Positions 19,311 through 64,000 of a stretch of DNA of 64,000 nt are shown here, in pieces. The stretch lies in IMG/VR virus record IMGVR_UViG_3300045256_000050, positions 62,001 to 126,000 of that record. One strand, written 5' to 3'. Position numbers and translations under genes: made by a program. Numbering within the stretch: the stretch's first letter is position 1; each line of letters opens with the position of its first letter. Below the pieces are notes generated by a model. The model searched no databases. It had not been told where the DNA came from and saw nothing but the letters and a program-made list of their open reading frames with translations.

Positions 19311-19754
19311 ATGAAGACTGTTGAAGAATGGATTGCGAAGTGGAATGAGACTCGGCTGTTGACCAACCTGCCGGAAGAGAAAGTCAGGCCGACGGCCTGT
19401 GCGTTGTCCAACCAGATCGGCTACAACGAGCGGAGTCAATTCCTGCCTGCGTTCCAGCGGTTGTCCATCCCCATCCTGCGGCGGGTGTTCGGCGGGATGA
19501 AGGCTAAGAATGTGACATCCAAGTTGGTTGAGACGCCGACCAAGAGCCACGTCGTCAACCTAGACCCTTTCAACGTTACGGAACTACAGTATGACGGTCA
19601 TGGTGGATACAACCTTGAGTTTGAGGCCCAGCGGACCGCCGAATACTGTGTCAAGCTCGCCGAGTACATCGACGAGTTGGCTTCGAAAGTTGATGAATTC
19701 GTCCTGCTCGGGATCGGGTGGAACGGATCAAACGTCGTCCTCTATACTGAATGA
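19311..19754 (+). CDS. Small protein whose N-terminal half is paralogous to the N-terminus of the major capsid protein
   Basis: KWNETRLL...TACALSNQ...FQRLSIPILRRVF aligns with KWAKTKLL...TAVLLENQ...FKRISIPLVRRIY of the capsid gene at 63114. Confidence 0.75.
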   Translation: MKTVEEWIAKWNETRLLTNLPEEKVRPTACALSNQIGYNERSQFLPAFQRLSIPILRRVFGGMKAKNVTSKLVETPTKSHVVNLDPFNVTELQYDGHGGYNLEFEAQRTAEYCVKLAEYIDELASKVDEFVLLGIGWNGSNVVLYTE

Positions 19755-19761
19755 AGGAAAG

Positions 19762-20433
19762 ATGAAGATTTACTTAGCAGACATCAAGCCGCAACTGCGG
19801 ATCGCCTGGAAGAATGCCTTCAGGGGCGTAGAGAACGTCCAGGTGTACGAGCGGGGCATTGGCTCCATTCTCGACCTGGAGGTTGACGCCCTGGTCAGCC
19901 CGGCCAACAGCTTCGGGTTTATGGACGGCGGGATCGACGAGTTGTACTCGGAAACCCTCGGGTGGCATGTTTCGGAACGTTTGCAGGATCACATCGTCAA
20001 GGATTTCAACGGCGAGTTGCTGATCGGGCAGGCGACCATCGTGCCGACCGACCATGCGGTGTTCAAGTATTTGATCGCCGCCCCGACGATGCGGGTGCCG
20101 ACCCGTCTGCCGGACAACACGGTGAACGTGTTCCTGGCGACTCGGGCGGCGTTGTTCCTGGCGGACAAGATGGCAAAGCGTGGGCTACTGACTTCCGTGG
20201 CGTTCCCCGGCTTGGGGACGGGCATCGGGGCGGTATCCCCGGAGAAGTGCGCACTCCAGATGCGTGCGGCTTACGATTGGGTGTTCAACAACGAACGCCC
20301 GGAGATGGAGTGGAAGAAGGTTCTCGACCACCACACCTACCTCTACACTGGACTTCGGGCAACTAACACTTGGGAGATGTCCGATAACGACCCAGACCCG
20401 GAACTCGGGTGGGAAGACGAACTAGAACAATAA
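19762..20433 (+). CDS. Macrodomain (ADP-ribose binding/hydrolase) protein
   Basis: DALVSPANSFGFMDGGID and SVAFPGLGTGIG motifs; ATG at 19762 after GGA SD. Confidence 0.9.
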   Translation: MKIYLADIKPQLRIAWKNAFRGVENVQVYERGIGSILDLEVDALVSPANSFGFMDGGIDELYSETLGWHVSERLQDHIVKDFNGELLIGQATIVPTDHAVFKYLIAAPTMRVPTRLPDNTVNVFLATRAALFLADKMAKRGLLTSVAFPGLGTGIGAVSPEKCALQMRAAYDWVFNNERPEMEWKKVLDHHTYLYTGLRATNTWEMSDNDPDPELGWEDELEQ

Positions 20434-29081: not shown

Positions 29082-29987
29082 ATGCTCAACCTACCTATCG
29101 ACCTGACTCAATCCAAGAACACCTTGTTCTTGGGCATCGGGGGCGGCTTCGACATCTACGGGGCCGTCCCTTTGTTTGCGCAAAACCACAACGCCAACAC
29201 GAGACTCTTCTTCGCCAATGTCAACGCCTCGGTCAAGAGCGTGTTGAAGTTCCCCAGGGACGATCACCCGTGTCCCGAAGGCTTCCTGGCCGGGTGGCTG
29301 GAGAAGCAGGAATACAAAACCACCGTCTACGCCCTACCTCGTGCCGGTGTGATCCCAACCCGGAACATCCTGCACACCATCATGAAAGAACACGCCATTG
29401 ACACGATTGTGTGCGTGGACGGCGGGGTGGATTCACTGATGGTGGGCGACGAGGAAGGGGCCGGGACGATTCTGGAGGACTTCGTGACGATGCAGGCGGT
29501 GAGTGCCCTGCGTGTGGCGAAGGTTCTGGTCTGCCTGGGTTTCGGCACGGAGACGGACGAGGACGTGTGCCACAACCATGCGTTACAGAACATGGCGGCT
29601 CTGGCTGCCGACGGGGCGTTCTGGGGTTGTTCTTCACTGACGAAGGACGACCCGGAATACCAAGCCTATCGAGAAGTGTGCGAGTACGCATGGGCCGACG
29701 GGAGGCGTAAGAGCCACGTCCACACGAAAGTCATCTCGGCCGTCGAGGGGAAGTTCGGGAACGACTCTCTGTACTCGGACGTGGACCCGCAACTCGCCGG
29801 GAAGACGAACACAGTAAACTACATTAACCCGTTGATGCCGATCATGTGGTTCTACGATCTCGACAAGGTGCTGGCCCGTAACAAGCTGGCGAAGTTGTTC
29901 GAGAACACCAACCTCAGCACCGACGTGTTGATGTTGTACAGGTCTAACAAGTTACCACTGAGGGAGCGACAAGCTATTCCGCTATGA
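29082..29987 (+). CDS. DUF1152-like protein
   Basis: GIGGGFD and VDGGVDSLMVGDEEGAGTILED motifs. Confidence 0.75.
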   Translation: MLNLPIDLTQSKNTLFLGIGGGFDIYGAVPLFAQNHNANTRLFFANVNASVKSVLKFPRDDHPCPEGFLAGWLEKQEYKTTVYALPRAGVIPTRNILHTIMKEHAIDTIVCVDGGVDSLMVGDEEGAGTILEDFVTMQAVSALRVAKVLVCLGFGTETDEDVCHNHALQNMAALAADGAFWGCSSLTKDDPEYQAYREVCEYAWADGRRKSHVHTKVISAVEGKFGNDSLYSDVDPQLAGKTNTVNYINPLMPIMWFYDLDKVLARNKLAKLFENTNLSTDVLMLYRSNKLPLRERQAIPL

Positions 29988-30847
29988 GAATCCGAAAAGA
30001 CGAAAAGACTCGTAACAATTTCATTCGTGCAGGCGGGGTCTGGGTCCGGGACTTCACTAAACCCAACTCCATGCCCGTGACGCCGAACGCCCTGGTCCGT
30101 CCGGCCGACAAGCCGTTGATCGTGCAGAACGAGTTCCAGAACCGGGCGTTGAACATCGGCAACATCTGCGACGAGAAGTTGGTGTTCCCGAAGGTGGTCA
30201 TCATCTCCGACGGCTACTCGTTTGCCAAGCGGGTAGACTTCATCAACAGCCTGCCGAACGACGTGGCGGTCTTCGCCGTCAACCATGCGTTGAACAAGTG
30301 GCGGACGACCGGGTTCAAGAAGCCCGTAAACCTGTATGTGGTGAATAACCCGTACCCGGAGGCGACAAGCTACCTGCCGAGAAAGTCGAAATACTACCCG
30401 GCGTGCGTGGCGTCAATGCGGACCAATGCGAAGTTCCTGAAGGACTACAAGGGGACGACGTATGTGTACGAGCCGGTTCCCGAGGAAGGGTTCGGACAAA
30501 AGGGTGACAGTCTTTACTATGTTGATGACTACCGAAACCCGGTGTGTGCGGCGATTGGCCTCGCCTACCGGATGCGTGCCCAGAAGATCATGCTCGTCAG
30601 TTGCGACGAGTCATTCGGTGAGAAGAAGGACGGGGCTGAGGAATTACCGAACGGCCTCTATACCTATCCGCAGCAGTTGATGGCCCAGGAGTTGATCGAC
30701 GCCAACCTGTACTGGTTTACTAAGAAGAAGACCGGCGAGGCGAAGGCCGCAAACTACTCAGACGGCCCAGAAAACAAGCATGCTACATATATAACCCAAG
30801 ACGAGCAGGCATTGGCATTCTTTGCGGATGAAGATGAAGACGCCTAA
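29984..30847 (+). CDS. Maf / DUF115 (MptE-like) fold protein, possible glycosyltransferase
   Basis: VIISDGYS...VFAVNHAL and PVCAAIGLAYRMRAQKIMLVSCD motifs. Confidence 0.55.
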   Translation: MRIRKDEKTRNNFIRAGGVWVRDFTKPNSMPVTPNALVRPADKPLIVQNEFQNRALNIGNICDEKLVFPKVVIISDGYSFAKRVDFINSLPNDVAVFAVNHALNKWRTTGFKKPVNLYVVNNPYPEATSYLPRKSKYYPACVASMRTNAKFLKDYKGTTYVYEPVPEEGFGQKGDSLYYVDDYRNPVCAAIGLAYRMRAQKIMLVSCDESFGEKKDGAEELPNGLYTYPQQLMAQELIDANLYWFTKKKTGEAKAANYSDGPENKHATYITQDEQALAFFADEDEDA

Positions 30848-30911
30848 AGGATGTGCTGTGCGGGCCTGAATGAATGCAGTGCTTACACGGGTACATTCTT
30901 CGGAGGACTTA

Positions 30912-31244
30912 ATGAGTAACGAACGACCATCGTTTTCGCTACACGATTTCAAGAACTGGCTGTCCCAACAGAAGGATATGTCCGAGTTCTTCAACATCGA
31001 GAAACCCACCGCCTCGAAGGCAGAGGGCTTCATCGGGATGAGTGTGACCCCAAAGGTGGGGATGAAGAAGTTGCTTGAGAAGGCTCACGCCGACGACGGC
31101 GATGCGGAACAAATGGTTCACGAACTCGTCGAGGAAGGCGGCGTGATCGTTGACACGAAGGGCAAAGAACTCTTAATTGAGGTTGATTCGGGTTGTTTTT
31201 ACCTGCCCCGCTTCTGCGTCCGACTGGTTAAGGACGAGGAGTAA
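30912..31244 (+). CDS. Hypothetical protein
   Basis: ATG at 30912 after GGAGG; N-terminus contains DFKNWL. Confidence 0.75.
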   Translation: MSNERPSFSLHDFKNWLSQQKDMSEFFNIEKPTASKAEGFIGMSVTPKVGMKKLLEKAHADDGDAEQMVHELVEEGGVIVDTKGKELLIEVDSGCFYLPRFCVRLVKDEE

Positions 31245-32036
31245 CGCCTTCCACATGTCGTCCACCGAAACCCGGCTGATGCACGCCTGATCGCCGGTTT
31301 CGCAAACATCCGTGCAATACGTTAGCCCTGTCTTGCGGCTGTGACAGCCCAGACAGGGCAATTCTTTTGCCGTCACCGGCACCACGTTACTGTTGAACAC
31401 CCGAGTGTTCGGGGCCACGCTCCCGAAGAACACCACCGCCGGAGTCTCGACGGCCTGGGCGACGTGGAACGGGAACGAGTCTACCCCCACGAACGCCTTC
31501 GCATCTTTGATGATGGTCGCCAGTTCGCCGACCGTCGTCTTGTTCCTCACGTCAACGTGGCTCGGGACGAAGTGGTCGCCCTCGCCGCCCACGCACACGA
31601 TCTGGTAGCCCGCATTATACAACCGAAGGGCGAGTTCCCGCCACTCGTTCTTGCCCCACGCCCGGCCGACCCAGCCTTCCGAAACACCGGCGTGGACGAC
31701 GACGTAGTTCACCACTTCCGGCTTGTTCACCGGGTCGTTCTTGACGAACAGTTCGCAGTCCTCGACGGGAACCCCGGCCTTGTCGGCGTAGCACTTCAGG
31801 AAGTTCTCGCTCTGGCGGGCCTCGTAGGCGGCGTCCAGGTTGATGACGAGATCGAACTGTCGTTGTGGGTCCGGCTTGATGATGAAGTCCACGAACGGGT
31901 TGCCGTGGAGGGAGTGGTGGCACTCGGTAGCGAAGTAGATTCGGCAGTCCGGGTACTTCTTTTTGAGGGCGGGGCAGACGGCGGCGGCTACGAAAACGTC
32001 GCCGGTCGAACCCATTCGGTTGATGAGGATGTCCAT
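31173..32036 (-). CDS. Glycosyltransferase family 9 (heptosyltransferase-like)
   Basis: RMGSTGDV...KKKYPDCRIYF; FVGVDSFPFHVAQAVETPAVVFFG; C-terminal CxxC...C...C. Confidence 0.9.
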   Translation of the reverse strand: MDILINRMGSTGDVFVAAAVCPALKKKYPDCRIYFATECHHSLHGNPFVDFIIKPDPQRQFDLVINLDAAYEARQSENFLKCYADKAGVPVEDCELFVKNDPVNKPEVVNYVVVHAGVSEGWVGRAWGKNEWRELALRLYNAGYQIVCVGGEGDHFVPSHVDVRNKTTVGELATIIKDAKAFVGVDSFPFHVAQAVETPAVVFFGSVAPNTRVFNSNVVPVTAKELPCLGCHSRKTGLTYCTDVCETGDQACISRVSVDDMWKALLLVLNQSDAEAGQVKTTRINLN

Positions 32037-33766: not shown

Positions 33767-33786
33767 GTTTGACAAGACAAACAACG

Positions 33787-33819
33787 AACACCCGGCAGAA
33801 ATGCCGGGTGTTTTCTTTT
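33787..33819 (+). terminator. Rho-independent terminator
   Basis: AACACCCGGCA-GAAA-TGCCGGGTGTT followed by TTCTTTT. Confidence 0.9.
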
Positions 33820-33826
33820 ATACGGC

Positions 33827-34066
33827 ATGAACGCCGGTTACTTTTACTGCCCGTACATCCCGTTGCAAGATTCACCCACGGTTCTTGCGCCGGAGGGGAC
33901 GGAGTTCCCACAGGATGACGCCAGAACCATTAACGACATCGTGAACGGTCATGAGCGGTGGCGGTACGACGAGGACGACTACGACCCGTACTTCGATCCG
34001 GCCTCCGTGTTCTACATGGGTGGCAGTCTGCCCATCGACTTTGACTGGCTAAAGGAAGGATTCTGA
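33827..34066 (+). CDS. Small protein with gp23 C-terminal motif and DWLKEGF end
   Basis: MNAGYFYCPYIPL matches the gp23-family AG.FYCPY.PL motif. Confidence 0.65.
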   Translation: MNAGYFYCPYIPLQDSPTVLAPEGTEFPQDDARTINDIVNGHERWRYDEDDYDPYFDPASVFYMGGSLPIDFDWLKEGF

Positions 34067-35046
34067 TGAAGATTGTTACCCGACGGGTAGAGAACCGCAG
34101 GCCCGACAAGCTCCAGCGAATCATGTCCCTGGGCGACTTCGCCGAGAAGCGTAACCAAGTGCTGATTCAGCGGAACGTCGGCGGGTTGGGCGACATCTTC
34201 ATGCACCGGATGATGTTCGAAGATTTCAAGCGGGTCATGCCCGACGCCAAGATTCACTTCGCTTGCCCCCGTCAGTACCACGACGCCGTGACTGACCACC
34301 CGTTCGTGGACAAGGTACTGGACTCGGCGACGGTGGATCGGTTTCAGTACATCGTCTCGTACAACACCACCACCGCCTGTGGCCGGTACGAACTCCGTAT
34401 GTTCCCCTATTCCGGCTTGCACCGGAGCGACATCTGGGCGCAACACTGCGGGGTTCACCTGACGAACCACAACATGCACATACGCATGACGGCCGAGGAA
34501 GTCGCCTGGGGGCGAGCGAAGTTGGAGGAGAACCGGGACCGGCCGGGGCCGATTGTCCTGATGTCGCCGGTGAGTGCGATGGAGAACAAGAACCTGCTCT
34601 ACCACCAGACGGAGGGGACGGTGAAGGGGCTTTGGGAGCGGGGGAATTGTGTGATCGGACTGCACTACAACCCGCTCATGCACTTCACCAAGTTAAACGC
34701 CCCGTGTATCTACAAGCTCTCGGTTCGGCAGTGGATGAGCGTGATTGCGGCGGCGGATTACGTCGTGAGCGTGGACACGGCGGCGTTCCACTGTGCAGGC
34801 GGGATGGGGAAGCCGCTGACGGGCATCTTTACTTTCGCCGACGGGAAGGTGTACGGGCGGTATTACAAGGGGTTCGAGTTGGTTCAACGGCACCGGGACG
34901 ACGGGGATTGGGACTGCGGGCCGTGTTACGATTGGGGCCGTTGCACGAAGACGAAGGCAAACCCGAAGCCGTGCCTGACCGAGATCACTTCGGACATGAT
35001 TCTGAAGGCAACTGACAAAATGTTTGCGAAACACTCATCTAAATAA
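34066..35046 (+). CDS. Glycosyltransferase family 9 (heptosyltransferase-like)
   Basis: GGLGDI...PDAKIHFAC; VVSVDTAAFHCAGGMGKPLTGIF; C-terminal CxPC...C...C. Confidence 0.9.
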   Translation: MKIVTRRVENRRPDKLQRIMSLGDFAEKRNQVLIQRNVGGLGDIFMHRMMFEDFKRVMPDAKIHFACPRQYHDAVTDHPFVDKVLDSATVDRFQYIVSYNTTTACGRYELRMFPYSGLHRSDIWAQHCGVHLTNHNMHIRMTAEEVAWGRAKLEENRDRPGPIVLMSPVSAMENKNLLYHQTEGTVKGLWERGNCVIGLHYNPLMHFTKLNAPCIYKLSVRQWMSVIAAADYVVSVDTAAFHCAGGMGKPLTGIFTFADGKVYGRYYKGFELVQRHRDDGDWDCGPCYDWGRCTKTKANPKPCLTEITSDMILKATDKMFAKHSSK

Positions 35047-35049
35047 GAC

Positions 35050-35292
35050 ATGCCTCAGCGTATTACACCCGTGAAGGTCATGTCCGTGAGCCAGAATGGC
35101 GAGTGCCATCTGACGATCACGTTGGAGTTGAACATCAATTTGACCGCCAACGGTGAGATCGGTGCGTCACTGCAAGCTCAGGGAGAGAAGCCTATGAAAG
35201 CCCGGCCGATTCAGGAAGACGATGATGTCGAACTTACGGTCCCGGATTTCGTATCGGGTATGAAGCTGGACTTTGGTAAACAAGTGGAGTGA
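35050..35292 (+). CDS. Small hypothetical protein
   Basis: 80-aa ORF directly upstream of the actin-like gene. Confidence 0.7.
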   Translation: MPQRITPVKVMSVSQNGECHLTITLELNINLTANGEIGASLQAQGEKPMKARPIQEDDDVELTVPDFVSGMKLDFGKQVE

Positions 35293-35297
35293 AAGAA

Positions 35298-36308
35298 ATG
35301 GCTATTGGATTCGACGCCGGAACCTACAACTTGGTGTGCTGCCACCGCAACGATAAGGGAGACTTCCTTTACCGCCGGGAGGTTAACGCCTTCTTGGAAA
35401 TGCCTCTTGAGAACAAGTTCGTCTACAACATGATGAAGAAGGCAGGCGTGCCGCTGATCCTCCGGGAAGATGCGAACGTCGCCTACGCCATCGGTGAGGC
35501 CGCTGTCGAGATGGCTTACACGATGCCCCAGATCGAGCTTCGCCGCCCGATGAAGGACGGCTGTGTCAACCCGAAGGAGCGTGACGCTTTTCAAATCTTG
35601 AACATCATGGCCCACAGCCTGATCGGGGACGTTGCGGAAGACAAGACGACCCTGTACTACTCCGTCCCGGCCAACGCCGTGAACACAGAGACGGACGCTG
35701 ACTACCACCGCAAGATTCTCGACGCCATCTTCAAGGCGTACAAGAGCAAGAATGGGTACATCGTCAACGCCCACCCGATCAACGAAGCCCTCGCCCTGAT
35801 CTACGCCGAGTTGGCGAACAAGGCGTTCACGGGCATCGGCATCAGCTTCGGGGCCGGTATGGTCAACCTGTGTTACTCGATCTTCGCCGCCCCGGTGTTC
35901 CAGTTCTCGCTGGTCAACTCGGGCGACTGGATCGACAAGCAGGCCGCTAAGGCTCTCGGCGAGAGCGTGGCGTTCGTCAACAAGGAGAAGACGAAGATTG
36001 ACCTGGGCAAAGAGCCGACGAACAACACCGAGCGGGCCATCGGCACTCAGTACAAGCTCATGATCGAGAAGACCGTCGCCGGGATCAAGAAGGGTCTGGA
36101 AGACAGCAAGAAGGGTAACACCGCCGAGGCCGTTGACGTGGTGATCGCCGGTGGCACGTCGAGTCCTCCGGGCTTCGACAAGCTGTTCGAGACGGTGCTG
36201 CGTGAGGCCGAACTGCCGATCAAGATTGGCAAGGTCATCCGCCCGGCCGACCCGCTGTACAGTGTGGCCCGTGGCTGCCTCGTAGCAGCGGAGAACGCCA
36301 ATGTCTAA
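35298..36308 (+). CDS. Actin-fold ATPase (MreB/FtsA/ParM-like)
   Basis: Phosphate-1 IGFDAGT, phosphate-2-like GISFGAG, adenosine motif IAGGTS, terminal PLYSVARGCL. Confidence 0.85.
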   Translation: MAIGFDAGTYNLVCCHRNDKGDFLYRREVNAFLEMPLENKFVYNMMKKAGVPLILREDANVAYAIGEAAVEMAYTMPQIELRRPMKDGCVNPKERDAFQILNIMAHSLIGDVAEDKTTLYYSVPANAVNTETDADYHRKILDAIFKAYKSKNGYIVNAHPINEALALIYAELANKAFTGIGISFGAGMVNLCYSIFAAPVFQFSLVNSGDWIDKQAAKALGESVAFVNKEKTKIDLGKEPTNNTERAIGTQYKLMIEKTVAGIKKGLEDSKKGNTAEAVDVVIAGGTSSPPGFDKLFETVLREAELPIKIGKVIRPADPLYSVARGCLVAAENANV

Positions 36309-36726: not shown

Positions 36727-37191
36727 ATGGCAGCTAACATGTTTGGAATCGATATGGAAGAGAGTTTCTTGGATCACGACGAAGTGGTCAAGATGCTGGA
36801 GGCGGCGGGCACCCGATGTGCCTGGGATTTCAACACGGCCCTGGGCGACACGATCCGTGAGAAGTACGAATCCCTGTACATCAAGGTTGTGGAAGTCACC
36901 AACGTCCTGATTCGTAAGGGGGCGAGCGGGTTGTTCTGGATTTGTGCCTCGCCGGAAGTCGCCTCGATCTTCGAGGTTGCGACGATGGGCTTCTACCCGA
37001 CCAGTGCGGAACAGATCGAGTTGGGCACCAAGAAGGTTTACAAGCTCGGGGTCATGCAACGCCGGTGGAGCATCTACGTTGACCCGTCGCTCGACGGCAA
37101 CAAGGTTTTGATCGGGTGTGGCGAACACAAGATGCACGAGGGCGACGAAAAGAGCTACGCCGCAATGACCGTGGCTAACTTTGTCATCTGA
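36727..37191 (+). CDS. Small protein paralogous to the C-terminal half of gp23 major capsid protein
   Basis: WICASPEVASIF...GVMQRRWSIYVDP...NKVLIG resembles gp23-family FII.S..VAS.L...G.L.G.Y.VY.D...VGYKG. Confidence 0.7.
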   Translation: MAANMFGIDMEESFLDHDEVVKMLEAAGTRCAWDFNTALGDTIREKYESLYIKVVEVTNVLIRKGASGLFWICASPEVASIFEVATMGFYPTSAEQIELGTKKVYKLGVMQRRWSIYVDPSLDGNKVLIGCGEHKMHEGDEKSYAAMTVANFVI

Positions 37192-43954: not shown

Positions 43955-44203
43955 ATGAACGAAACGATTGTGTGCCCGACGTACATCCTGACCGACACGA
44001 CGCAGATTGCTTGTCACGGGATGAGCTTCCCGTCGGTCGAAGATGCGATTGCTTACGCCAAGCAGTTGCAGGAGTTGGGGCTGTGTCAAACGTTTACCGT
44101 CGGAGGTTACTCCGACGGCAAGTACGTTAACGTCTTTACTTCTTCCCCGGAGTCGGGATATAGTCCGGCGGATACTGTCCTTGCGGGTTGTTTCGGTCTT
44201 TGA
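43955..44203 (+). CDS. Small hypothetical protein
   Basis: 82-aa ORF with AAGGA SD; 3' end overlaps the convergent protease gene. Confidence 0.55.
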   Translation: MNETIVCPTYILTDTTQIACHGMSFPSVEDAIAYAKQLQELGLCQTFTVGGYSDGKYVNVFTSSPESGYSPADTVLAGCFGL

Positions 44204-63113: not shown

Positions 63114-64000
63114 ATGATGAATTCCCGATTCTTGAACGAAGCTAAGGCCATCGAACAAAAGTGGGCCAAGACTAAGCTTCTCAACAAGATTGAAGACCGC
63201 TTCACTCGTTCCGCCACTGCTGTTCTTCTGGAAAACCAGTGGTTGATGAATGAAGCGATGACGGATACGGGCGACATTGCCAGCTTCAAGCGTATTAGCA
63301 TTCCGCTGGTTCGCCGTATCTACCCGCAGTTGATTGCGAACAAGATTGTGTCGGTTCAGCCGCTTCTCGGCCCGACGGGTCTTGTGTACTACCTCCGCTT
63401 CCGCTACTCGTCCAACAAGGGCGGCATGCGTGGCGCAAGCCTCCAGGGCGGCTACCCGAGCGACGACGCAGCATCGCTGCAACAGTTGGCTTCCGGTGAC
63501 GGCAACCTGGAAATCTACTACACCCACCAGTTCGTACAGAACGAAGTTTCTTCGACGCATCCGGGTGGTAGCAGCGTAGCAGCAGTGTACGCACCGCTGG
63601 AACACACTCCGGTTCTTCCGGGTGCGTTCACCGGCACCGTGTACGACGGCAGCACCGCAATCCAGACCTTCATTGTGTCCACGTCTGGCGTGTTCACCTT
63701 CACGGACATCGGCACCCCGACCGTCAAGGCTCAGTCGAGCGGTTCGTCCATCGACCTGAACACCGGCGAAGTTGTTCTGCAATGGACCGGCGGCGATCCT
63801 GGTGACAACCACTTCGTTGCCTCCTACGAGTACAACATGGAGTGCAACCAAGACCTTCCTGAAGTCAACCTCGTCGTTGAGTCGGAAGAAATCGCAGCCA
63901 AGACCCGTAAGTTGAAGGCTGTGTGGAGCTACGAGGCTCAGCAAGACCTGCGTTCCCAGCACAACCTGGACGCCGAAGCTGAGTTGACGAGCGTCCTGGC
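63114..64000 (+). CDS. gp23: Major capsid protein (gp23-like), partial; runs off right edge
   Basis: Manual translation (absent from ORF track): TAVLLENQ, IPLVRRIYP, VSVQPLLGPTGLVYYLR, AAKTRKLKAVWSYEAQQDL...LDAEAEL. Confidence 0.97.
   Translation, partial: MMNSRFLNEAKAIEQKWAKTKLLNKIEDRFTRSATAVLLENQWLMNEAMTDTGDIASFKRISIPLVRRIYPQLIANKIVSVQPLLGPTGLVYYLRFRYSSNKGGMRGASLQGGYPSDDAASLQQLASGDGNLEIYYTHQFVQNEVSSTHPGGSSVAAVYAPLEHTPVLPGAFTGTVYDGSTAIQTFIVSTSGVFTFTDIGTPTVKAQSSGSSIDLNTGEVVLQWTGGDPGDNHFVASYEYNMECNQDLPEVNLVVESEEIAAKTRKLKAVWSYEAQQDLRSQHNLDAEAELTSVL

What the first reader, a model, noticed from the sequence alone, without database searches (positions are those of the whole stretch)
33827..34066. 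79-aa peptide beginning with the gp23 AGYFYCPYIPL motif
The first 23 residues (MNAGYFYCPYIPLQDSPTVLAPE) resemble the near-terminal gp23 strand. They are followed by an acidic linker and a DWLKEGF end, so the protein looks like a two-motif adaptor linking a capsid-like peptide to a terminal tag. It starts 8 nt after a terminator and overlaps the start of a GT9 gene.
Basis: partly seen in the sequence, partly recalled or inferred. Interest (0 to 1): 0.6.

Follow-up and report, generated by a model that had tools for sequence, protein, structure and literature searches.

The report
Capsid-strand mimic with portable tail tag
A real 79-residue gene of a huge phage joins a copy of one strand of the phage's own capsid protein to a ten-residue C-terminal tail that also ends dozens of unrelated small phage proteins; this points to an undescribed family of tagged mini-proteins whose binding partner is still unknown.

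Summary
The ORF at 33827-34066 exists as described. It is a real gene: three diverged lineages keep it, with dN/dS of 0.04-0.15 at dS of 0.9-1.8 and only in-frame indels.

Residues 1-23 are homologous to residues 425-447 of this phage's own gp23-type major capsid protein (MCP; 15/23 identical, shuffle z = 18). That segment is the P-domain beta-strand that carries the T4 gp31-bypass site A455.

The last ten residues belong to a portable C-terminal motif, consensus E-[ED]-V-D-W-[VMLI]-K-E-G-F-COOH. It ends at least 50 otherwise unrelated small ORFs in phage and metagenome contigs. These ORFs often sit in tandem arrays whose stop and start codons overlap.

Other members also carry MCP peptides: three in G001 and three in metagenome contig L158. 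A second tail type, I[DT]DPWE, does the same in two other relatives.

ORF79 is a lineage-specific insertion between a conserved terminator cassette and a GT9-like gene that exists without it in relatives. The adaptor function, the tail's partner and any link to the GT9-like enzyme are not shown.

My best reading is an accessory mimic or adaptor protein. Pfam, PADLOC and the papers I searched describe nothing like it.

The parts
33786..33819 (+). Intrinsic-terminator-like hairpin (12-bp stem, GAAA loop) plus T-run. It is part of a repeated cassette, hairpin-TTTTCTTTTATA-N5-ATG.
   Evidence: dG -28.6, z -6.3. Two compensatory pair changes appear among relatives. A near-identical second copy lies at G000 127,810-127,873. 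Relatives carry it in another context.
33827..34066 (+). ORF79 (P0002), a 79-aa accessory mini-protein that is predicted to be disordered on its own.
   Evidence: Homologues P0004 and P0005. dN/dS 0.04-0.15. The Atlas model has pLDDT 0.33. There is no SD-like 4-mer upstream, although 53% of long ATG ORFs in this genome have one against 16% of random positions.
33827..33895 (+). Residues 1-23: a copy of MCP P-domain beta-strand c1 (MCP 425-447, equivalent to T4 gp23 444-466). Met1 aligns with MCP Met425.
   Evidence: T4 mapping from the alignment plus PMC9546572: T4 A455 aligns with MCP P436 and ORF79 P12.
33905..33949 (+). Residues 27-41 (FPQDDARTINDIVNG): a possible second MCP-derived peptide, similar to MCP 114-128.
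   Evidence: z = 4.8, reached by 1 of 2000 shuffles; the segment was chosen post hoc. hhalign gives probability of only 2.8%. Tentative.
34034..34063 (+). Residues 70-79 (IDFDWLKEGF): the portable C-terminal tail motif.
   Evidence: Codon third positions vary freely.
34052..34068 (+). AAGGAAGGA (SD sequence) inside tail codons K-E-G, followed by the TGATG stop/start overlap with the GT9-like gene.
   Evidence: Sequence. Conserved in L010-L012. The same arrangement is seen in 30 of 75 tagged ORFs.
34066..35046 (+). GT9-like glycosyltransferase gene, a core gene of the clade that is present without ORF79 in relatives.
36727..37191 (+). P0003, a 154-aa ORF that holds only the MCP A-domain (MCP 303-428 plus 470-481). 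It lacks exactly MCP 429-469, the hairpin whose first strand ORF79 carries.
63114..64000 (+). Cognate gp23-type MCP gene (481 aa). It runs off the window and is complete in L001:1339-2784.

Best explanation
ORF79 is a translated accessory gene of a huge phage with a T4-type capsid. The protein is a disordered, two-part mini-protein. Part 1 (residues 1-23, possibly also 27-41) is an old, exapted copy of a conserved MCP peptide: the P-domain beta-strand that in T4 gp23 carries the chaperonin-bypass site A455. Part 2 (the last ~10 residues) is a short linear motif with a free C-terminus. It is shared by dozens of unrelated small phage proteins, and I infer that it docks them all on one common partner. 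That partner is probably not encoded next to them and may be a host protein. I propose that ORF79 works as a mimic or adaptor. The MCP-like peptide would occupy a site that normally recognises this strand in unfolded or unassembled MCP. Candidate sites are a host receptor that senses MCP, a chaperonin or EF-Tu-type folding partner, or MCP itself. The tail would then couple or sequester that factor. I favour an arms-race role as an anti-defence decoy, because the family is accessory, lineage-specific, arrayed and hypervariable. Shown here: the gene is real and under selection, its N-terminus is homologous to the MCP, the tail is portable and conserved at the peptide level, MCP-peptide members recur, and ORF79 is an insertion. 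Inferred: any binding, the identity of either partner, and the direction of the effect.
For: Gene under selection: two full-length homologues from three contigs. dN/dS is 0.04-0.15 at dS 0.9-1.8, in both the MCP-like part and the rest, with only in-frame indels. MCP origin: with T4 mapping. Tail: 8 tagged ORFs in G001, 2 each in G016 and G017, and none in 13 other relatives. In metagenomes, 41 of 56 true-stop matches have an open frame of at least 35 aa with a start or a contig-end cut, against roughly 19% that I estimate by chance. Positions -8 (V in 32 of 52), -9 and -10 (acidic) are conserved although they were not in the search pattern. Codon third positions vary freely. G016 shares no detectable genes with the other tagged genomes yet has two tagged ORFs, and no neighbouring family recurs; both fit a partner that is not encoded locally. 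MCP peptides recur: three tagged minis in G001 carry MCP 47-106, 249-304, and 453-478 plus 420-447. L158 carries the same three segments in a different gene order. The I[DT]DPWE tail system in G004 and G005 carries MCP 401-466, 403-451, 320-372 and 452-465. Accessory status: ORF79 is absent at the syntenic site in G002-G005. Rationale for the decoy reading: MCPs are common triggers of bacterial immunity (Lit/Gol with EF-Tu, PMC3014915; Avs7 and Dsr1; CapRel, PMC9712102, listed).
Against: No partner was identified for either half. No expression data exist, because the only runs that hold this DNA are DNA metagenomes. ORF79 lacks an SD sequence and starts 7 nt after a terminator, so how it is translated is unclear. 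The MCP-like strand is buried in a beta-sheet in folded MCP, so it could only be recognised in unfolded states. A free MCP peptide might trigger a sensor rather than block it, as the Gol peptide activates Lit. No precedent for MCP-peptide decoys turned up in the papers searched. The family was found through a fixed pattern, so the columns D, W, K, E, G, F are fixed by ascertainment.
Confidence: 0.4

Rival explanations
1. Packaging tag. The tail is a capsid-targeting sequence that loads diverse small proteins into the prohead so they can be ejected into the next host. It would be analogous to the T4 internal-protein CTS or to the C-terminal cargo-loading peptides of encapsulins. ORF79 would then be one such internal protein.
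For: [quoted passage not shown] That is the same logic as diverse small ORFs sharing one terminal tag, arranged in arrays and specific to lineages. The tail contains [VLIM]-K-E, which resembles the T4 prohead-protease site L/I-x-E (from my own knowledge, not tested). Encapsulin shells have the HK97 fold and bind C-terminal cargo peptides (structure titles listed).
Against: G016, which shares no detectable gene with the gp23-clade phages, has the same tail. A capsid- or scaffold-specific tag would be expected to co-vary with the capsid module. At least one tagged ORF has an N-terminal transmembrane-like helix, and two more appear to by eye. The position is C-terminal rather than N-terminal, and the sequence differs from both the CTS and the encapsulin peptides. 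The idea also does not explain why MCP peptides would be cargo.
Confidence: 0.2
2. Split or auxiliary capsid paralogue. ORF79 donates the missing P-domain strand to the A-domain-only protein P0003 or to other MCP-derived pieces, rebuilding a capsid-like module that takes part in head assembly.
For: The boundaries are exactly complementary. P0003 and its homologues lack MCP 429-469, and ORF79 starts at MCP 425. The three tagged minis in G001 together hold all the P-domain elements (fold assignment by inference). P0003 is predicted to fold as an HK97-type domain.
Against: LR756511, G005 and G015 have P0003-like ORFs but no ORF79 homologue. G001 has tagged MCP minis but no separate P0003-like ORF in its 158 kb. 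In P0003 the deletion closes the sheet with a short loop, so no strand needs to be supplied (inference). ORF79 carries only one strand of the hairpin.
Confidence: 0.1
3. Adaptor for the adjacent GT9-like glycosyltransferase. ORF79 would recruit the enzyme to capsids or act as its acceptor or regulator.
For: The TGATG translational coupling is conserved in all three ORF79 lineages. The neighbourhood is rich in glycosyltransferase-like genes.
Against: The GT9-like gene sits at the same locus without ORF79 in G002, G003, G004 and G005. G001 has 8 tagged ORFs but no GT9-like match. Coupling to whatever gene follows is a generic feature of the tail cassette.
Confidence: 0.07
4. Relic. ORF79 is a leftover of a partial MCP duplication, kept only as an upstream ORF that lets ribosomes reach the GT9-like start. 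On this view the peptide itself has no function.
For: It starts at an internal MCP Met codon. It has no SD of its own. Its 3' end provides the SD and start overlap for the next gene.
Against: Purifying selection acts on the amino-acid sequence along the whole ORF, at saturating synonymous divergence. Relatives translate the GT9-like gene without any such leader. The same tail and the same MCP segments recur independently elsewhere.
Confidence: 0.04

Closest known systems
T4 internal proteins (IPI, IPII, IPIII) with their capsid targeting sequence (CTS)
   Same: These are diverse, fast-evolving small accessory proteins of a gp23-capsid phage that share only a ~10-residue terminal tag. Their loci are polymorphic between relatives, and they are thought to act in phage-host conflict (PMC3012670).
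   Different: The CTS is N-terminal and its sequence is unrelated. It binds the scaffolding core and is cut off by the prohead protease. Here the tag is C-terminal, packaging is unproven, the tag also occurs in a phage contig that shares no detectable genes with this clade, and some members carry capsid-protein peptides.
Encapsulin cargo-loading peptides
   Same: They are short C-terminal peptides on unrelated cargo proteins, and they dock onto a protein with the HK97 fold.
   Different: The consensus sequence is different. Nothing here shows that the tail binds the MCP. Encapsulin cargo proteins are enzymes, not fragments of the shell protein.
Gol peptide of T4 gp23 (Lit / EF-Tu exclusion system)
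   Same: It is a short, highly conserved gp23 segment that acts as a free-standing recognition element for host factors (PMC3014915). By its alignment to MCP 47-106 and the MCP-to-T4 gp23 alignment, segment 'a' of the tagged minis in G001 and L158 appears to fall in the first quarter of gp23, where that review places the Gol region. I did not check the exact Gol residue numbers.
   Different: ORF79 carries a different segment, the C-terminal P-domain strand (T4 444-466). Gol is not a separate gene and has no tail.
gp23 / gp24 major capsid and vertex proteins (Pfam PF07068)
   Same: ORF79 residues 1-23 are homologous to one strand of this family, and P0003 is homologous to its A-domain.
   Different: ORF79 covers about 20 of the 376 profile positions and scores below the family cut-off, so it cannot form the fold. 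It is a derived peptide, not a capsid protein.

Membership tests
Gp23 major capsid protein family (PF07068, HK97 fold) | The whole-protein score reaches Pfam's gathering cut-off and the match spans the fold. | tested here: not met
   16 bits against a cut-off of 24.4. Only residues 1-21 match, at profile positions 313-332 of 376. The cognate full-length MCP scores 281.6 bits.
Gp23 major capsid protein family (PF07068, HK97 fold) | Homology of the matched segment to a bona fide member. | tested here: met
   15/23 identical to MCP 425-447, E = 1e-10, shuffle z = 18.
T4-type internal proteins with CTS | One short conserved terminal tag shared by otherwise unrelated small phage proteins. | tested here: met
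   52 non-identical tails share E-[ED]-V-D-W-[VMLI]-K-E-G-F. 75 distinct tagged ORFs lie in the fetched loci.
T4-type internal proteins with CTS | The tag is N-terminal and resembles the T4 CTS. | tested here: not met
   The tag is at the extreme C-terminus, directly before the stop codon.
T4-type internal proteins with CTS | Encapsidation through the scaffold and removal of the tag by the prohead protease. | not testable with these tools
   No virion proteome exists for this uncultured phage.
Encapsulin-type C-terminal cargo-loading peptide | The peptide binds the inner face of the HK97-fold shell protein. | not testable with these tools
   No usable evidence was obtained. It needs a binding assay or a structure.
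Rho-independent terminator (upstream element) | A G+C-rich stem-loop followed by a T-run, with the structure conserved through covariation. | tested here: met
   Compensatory G-C to C-G and G-C to A-T changes occur in relatives and in the second genomic copy. Termination itself was not measured.
Known anti-phage defence or anti-defence protein families (PADLOC models), Pfam, PHROGs | A significant profile match. | tested here: not met
   PADLOC: none for ORF79, P0003, their neighbours or the three G001 minis. Pfam: none for 10 tagged proteins. PHROGs: only a 13.5-bit, 9-residue match for ORF79.

The most novel reading that the evidence does not exclude
Huge phages, and some unrelated phages, may run a modular 'bait plus handle' system. 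Arrays of mini-genes would each display a different bait on a constant C-terminal handle. The baits include peptides copied from the phage's own capsid protein, which is what bacterial immune receptors and folding factors recognise. The handle would plug every bait into one host or phage hub, for example to sequester, relocate or destroy whatever binds the bait. Two interchangeable handle types (DWxKEGF and I[DT]DPWE) would then mark different hubs or hosts. That would make this a new class of viral counter-defence built on self-mimicry.
Probability: 0.25. Interest if true: 0.9.

Novelty: new variant of a known kind. Interest (0 to 1): 0.72.

Why it matters
The tail would define a large, unannotated family of small proteins in uncultured huge phages, where most genes have no known function. 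It also offers a direct experimental route: a ten-residue peptide can be synthesised and used to fish for its partner. Capsid-protein fragments have been turned into selected, tagged mini-proteins repeatedly and independently. That is an unusual case of a virus copying pieces of its own most conserved structural protein. Many bacterial immune systems are triggered by capsid proteins, so this gives a concrete hypothesis for how phages might blunt that recognition. Alternatively, it may show how they load or organise capsid-associated factors. For annotation, it shows that weak, sub-threshold Gp23 hits in small ORFs can be real exapted fragments rather than noise or pseudogenes.

Tried and rejected
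(1) Complex prediction on MCP plus ORF79, using my own alignments, returned 'no answer'. It counts neither for nor against binding.

(2) The AF2 model of the full MCP from a 22-sequence, low-diversity alignment was too poor to use (pLDDT 44.7). I mapped the fold through the HMM alignment to solved T4 gp23 and published residue assignments.

(3) Co-occurrence with the actin-like gene was rejected. That gene is core to the clade, and it is present in tag-free, near-complete genomes.

(4) A search for a recurrent neighbour of tagged ORFs, as a receptor candidate, found no convincing family.

(5) I scanned one genome for each of 185,579 prokaryote species for a host protein ending in the same tail. 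The 17 hits match my chance estimate of about 17. Only two look real. One is a Pirellulaceae MAG contig whose ORF is homologous to a metagenome member. The other is a 145-aa ORF in a mobile-element-like island of Novipirellula. So no conserved cellular protein with this exact tail was found, and the Planctomycetota host hint is weak.

(6) I tested whether the rest of ORF79 is a permuted MCP copy. Residues 42-70 are not significant (p = 0.18). Residues 26-41 are nominally significant (1 of 2000 shuffles) but were chosen post hoc, and hhalign gives a probability of only 2.8%.

(7) RNA evidence: none of the runs that hold most of this DNA is RNA.

(8) No sigma-70-like promoter was found. Whether TTTTATA acts as a phage promoter, or the mRNA is leaderless, stays open.

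(9) The exhaustive protein-representative search was not run. The tail is too short to reach significance there, and no claim here rests on the absence of relatives.

Full report
**Observation.** The window is bases 62,001-126,000 of a 244,986-bp IMG/VR virus record, estimated 48% complete. Its closest GenBank relative is the 595-kb uncultured huge phage LR756511 (MCP 75% identical). The DNA comes from a hot-spring / microbial-mat metagenome.

The genome encodes one full-length gp23-type major capsid protein (MCP, 481 aa). Its gene starts at window 63114 and runs off the window. ORF79 residues 1-23 align without gaps to MCP 425-447, with 15/23 identical, E = 1e-10 and z = 18 against shuffles. 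Met1 of ORF79 falls on MCP Met425.

**It is a gene.** The word-index protein search found two full-length homologues of 75 and 77 aa, 84% and 78% identical. They lie on three short Logan contigs with the same gene order: a 191-aa gene, the hairpin, the small ORF, then the GT9-like gene.

Pairwise dN/dS is 0.04-0.15 at dS 0.9-1.8. The values are similar for codons 1-26 and for the rest of the ORF, and comparable to the neighbouring GT9-like gene. Only in-frame indels occur. The Atlas model of the protein alone has low confidence (pLDDT 0.33), which fits a disordered, peptide-like protein.

**Where the copied strand sits in the capsid fold.** A profile of 22 clade MCPs aligns to solved T4 gp23* (E = 2e-37). 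In that alignment T4 A455 corresponds to MCP P436 and to ORF79 P12.

[quoted passage not shown] It reports that A455V removes the need for the gp31 co-chaperonin, as do changes at 292, 306 and 307 in the spine helix (PMC9546572). ORF79 therefore carries a folding-critical P-domain strand. My own AF2 model of the MCP was too poor to use.

**A complementary neighbour.** The ORF at 36727-37191 (P0003) matches Pfam Gp23 positions 191-311 (E = 1.6e-8). It equals MCP 303-428 plus the last 12 residues.

P0003 and its homologues in G015 and G005 share one precise 41-residue deletion, MCP 429-469. That is exactly the hairpin whose first strand ORF79 carries. The LR756511 homologue (33% identical) looks the same by eye but was not in that alignment.

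The P0003 model (pLDDT 71, pTM 0.71) matches HK97-fold capsid proteins: P1, T4 gp23 and gp24, and encapsulins. These A-domain-only ORFs are sporadic in the clade and do not co-occur with ORF79.

**The tail is portable.** Searching related huge-phage records with the ORF79 profile found extra small ORFs that carry the MCP motif.

- In G001, three consecutive ORFs with overlapping stops and starts carry MCP 47-106, MCP 249-304, and MCP 453-478 followed by 420-447. Each ends in ...DW/EW-V-K-E-G-F.
- A degenerate DNA pattern for D-W-x-K-E-G-F-stop gave 10 stretches in IMG/VR.
- The same pattern gave 61 stretches in JGI metagenomes. There were 56 true-stop matches, and 41 had an open frame of at least 35 aa with a start or a contig-end cut.
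- In one genome for each of 185,579 prokaryote species it gave only the number of hits I estimated for chance, with two plausible exceptions in Planctomycetota.

Over 52 non-identical tails the consensus is E-[ED]-V-D-W-[VMLI]-K-E-G-F. Positions -8 to -10 were not in the search pattern, so they confirm the motif independently. Third codon positions vary freely, for example GGA/GGC/GGG/GGT at 23/13/15/24. The conservation is therefore at the peptide level, even though the K-E-G codons often double as the SD sequence of the next gene.

The parts upstream of the tail are diverse. They include repeat proteins, transmembrane-like helices and unknown domains, with a median length of 95 aa. They match no Pfam family and no PADLOC model.

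Tagged genes often sit in arrays. G001 has 8, and one metagenome sample has at least 12 across its contigs. In 30 of 75 cases the stop overlaps the next start. G016, a 29-kb contig that shares no detectable gene with the others, has two tagged ORFs.

**MCP peptides recur, in two tail systems.** Metagenome contig L158 holds five consecutive tagged minis. Three carry the same MCP segments as in G001 (a, b and c) but in reversed order, so this is not a decaying colinear pseudogene.

G004 and G005 lack the DWxKEGF tail. They have a second tail, I[DT]DPWE, 2 and 7 times respectively, with none in 14 other genomes and none in the controls. That tail is attached to MCP 401-466, 403-451, 320-372 and 452-465, and also to non-MCP ORFs.

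All MCP-derived minis are about equally distant from every MCP of the clade. They are therefore not recent captures from the resident MCP gene.

**Genomic setting.** In G002-G005 the 191-aa gene is followed by the GT9-like gene after 15-85 nt; G002, G004 and G005 have a terminator hairpin of different sequence in that gap. ORF79 is thus a lineage-specific insertion between a terminator and a core gene.

Its upstream hairpin shows two compensatory pair changes among relatives. A near-identical cassette (hairpin, TTTTCTTTTATA, 5 nt, ATG) recurs downstream of the MCP and HNH genes. There too a small 96-aa ORF sits between the cassette and the gene that directly follows it in relatives.

ORF79 has no SD-like 4-mer, although 53% of long ATG ORFs here do. 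No sigma-70-like promoter was found, and no RNA data exist.

**Interpretation.** The evidence establishes a bipartite, selected mini-protein: an exapted MCP P-domain strand plus a portable C-terminal short linear motif. It does not establish what either half binds.

I favour a mimic or adaptor role in phage-host conflict. The family is accessory, arrayed, hypervariable and specific to lineages, like the T4 internal proteins that share only a targeting tag (PMC3012670). The MCP is also a frequent trigger of bacterial immunity.

The main rival is a capsid-packaging tag. A strand-donor role towards P0003, a dedicated GT9 adaptor and a functionless relic are each disfavoured by specific observations; see the rival explanations.

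**Comparison and novelty.** ORF79 is not a member of the Gp23 family; it is a fragment that scores below the cut-off. It resembles the T4 internal-protein / CTS system and the encapsulin cargo peptides in logic only.

The Pfam, PHROGs and PADLOC scans I ran found no family for ORF79 or for the other tagged proteins I tested, and none of the papers I searched describes the tail or MCP-peptide mini-proteins. I rate it a new variant of a known kind: small phage accessory proteins that share a terminal tag. There is a real chance that it is something categorically new.

Noticed in passing
window 36727-37191 (P0003); G015:19196-19750; G005:524328-524810; L009:1459-1965: These are small ORFs that hold only the MCP A-domain. 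P0003 and the G015 and G005 homologues share the same precise 41-residue deletion of the P-domain hairpin; the LR756511 copy (L009) looks the same by eye. P0003 is predicted to fold as an HK97-type domain. They are sporadic in the clade, and their function is unknown.
   Followed up: yes
G005:517817-518784 and 351044-351618; G004:177688-179873: A second, mutually exclusive C-terminal tail (...KKYRSI[DT]DPWE...) sits on arrays of small ORFs. Several of them carry MCP fragments, including A-domain helices and strand c2.
   Followed up: partly
window 35289-36308; G007:124937-127042; G011:45192-47303: An actin-like gene (Pfam Volactin, E = 3.6e-68) is core to this phage clade. In G007 and G011 it is interrupted by an in-frame insertion of about 1.1 kb inside one 711-716-aa open frame, which looks like an intein.
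   Followed up: no
window 35050-35292: An 80-aa ORF lies directly upstream of the actin-like gene. It is conserved in all relatives examined (MPQLIKP... start, ...IPDF-SG-KL-FGK end) and may be the filament's adaptor.
   Followed up: no
window 29082-32036 and 34066-35046: A cluster of glycosylation-type genes is present: DUF1152 (29082-29987), MptE-like (29984-30847, below Pfam's cut-off), and two GT9-like genes (31173-32036 on the - strand and 34066-35046 on the + strand). They flank a 191-aa gene that is followed by a strong terminator.
   Followed up: no
window 19311-19754 and 19591-20430: A 147-aa ORF has weak similarity to the MCP N-terminus (MCP 11-80, tblastn E = 2e-4) and overlaps a macro-domain gene. 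In G017 a homologue of that macro-domain gene lies directly upstream of a tagged ORF.
   Followed up: partly
G000 127,810-128,160 (outside the window; L240:111-461): This is the second copy of the hairpin-TTTTCTTTTATA-ATG cassette, followed by an inserted 96-aa ORF. Two HNH-endonuclease-like ORFs lie between the MCP gene and the cassette.
   Followed up: partly
L143:3460-3897 (Novipirellula chromosome); L142 (Pirellulaceae MAG): Tail-bearing ORFs occur in Planctomycetota assemblies. One lies next to an HNH-type ORF in a mobile-element-like island. This is a weak hint at host range.
   Followed up: partly
window 43982-44143: A small ORF is 43% identical to a tagged ORF of G017 (34955-35182) but lacks the tail here. 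The tail can apparently be gained or lost within one protein family.
   Followed up: no
G000 203,301-203,375 (-) and 241,564-241,701 (-), outside the window: Two further weak MCP-like pieces were found (MCP 78-102, E = 0.09; MCP 13-73, E = 0.15). They may be additional untagged MCP-derived ORFs or chance matches.
   Followed up: no
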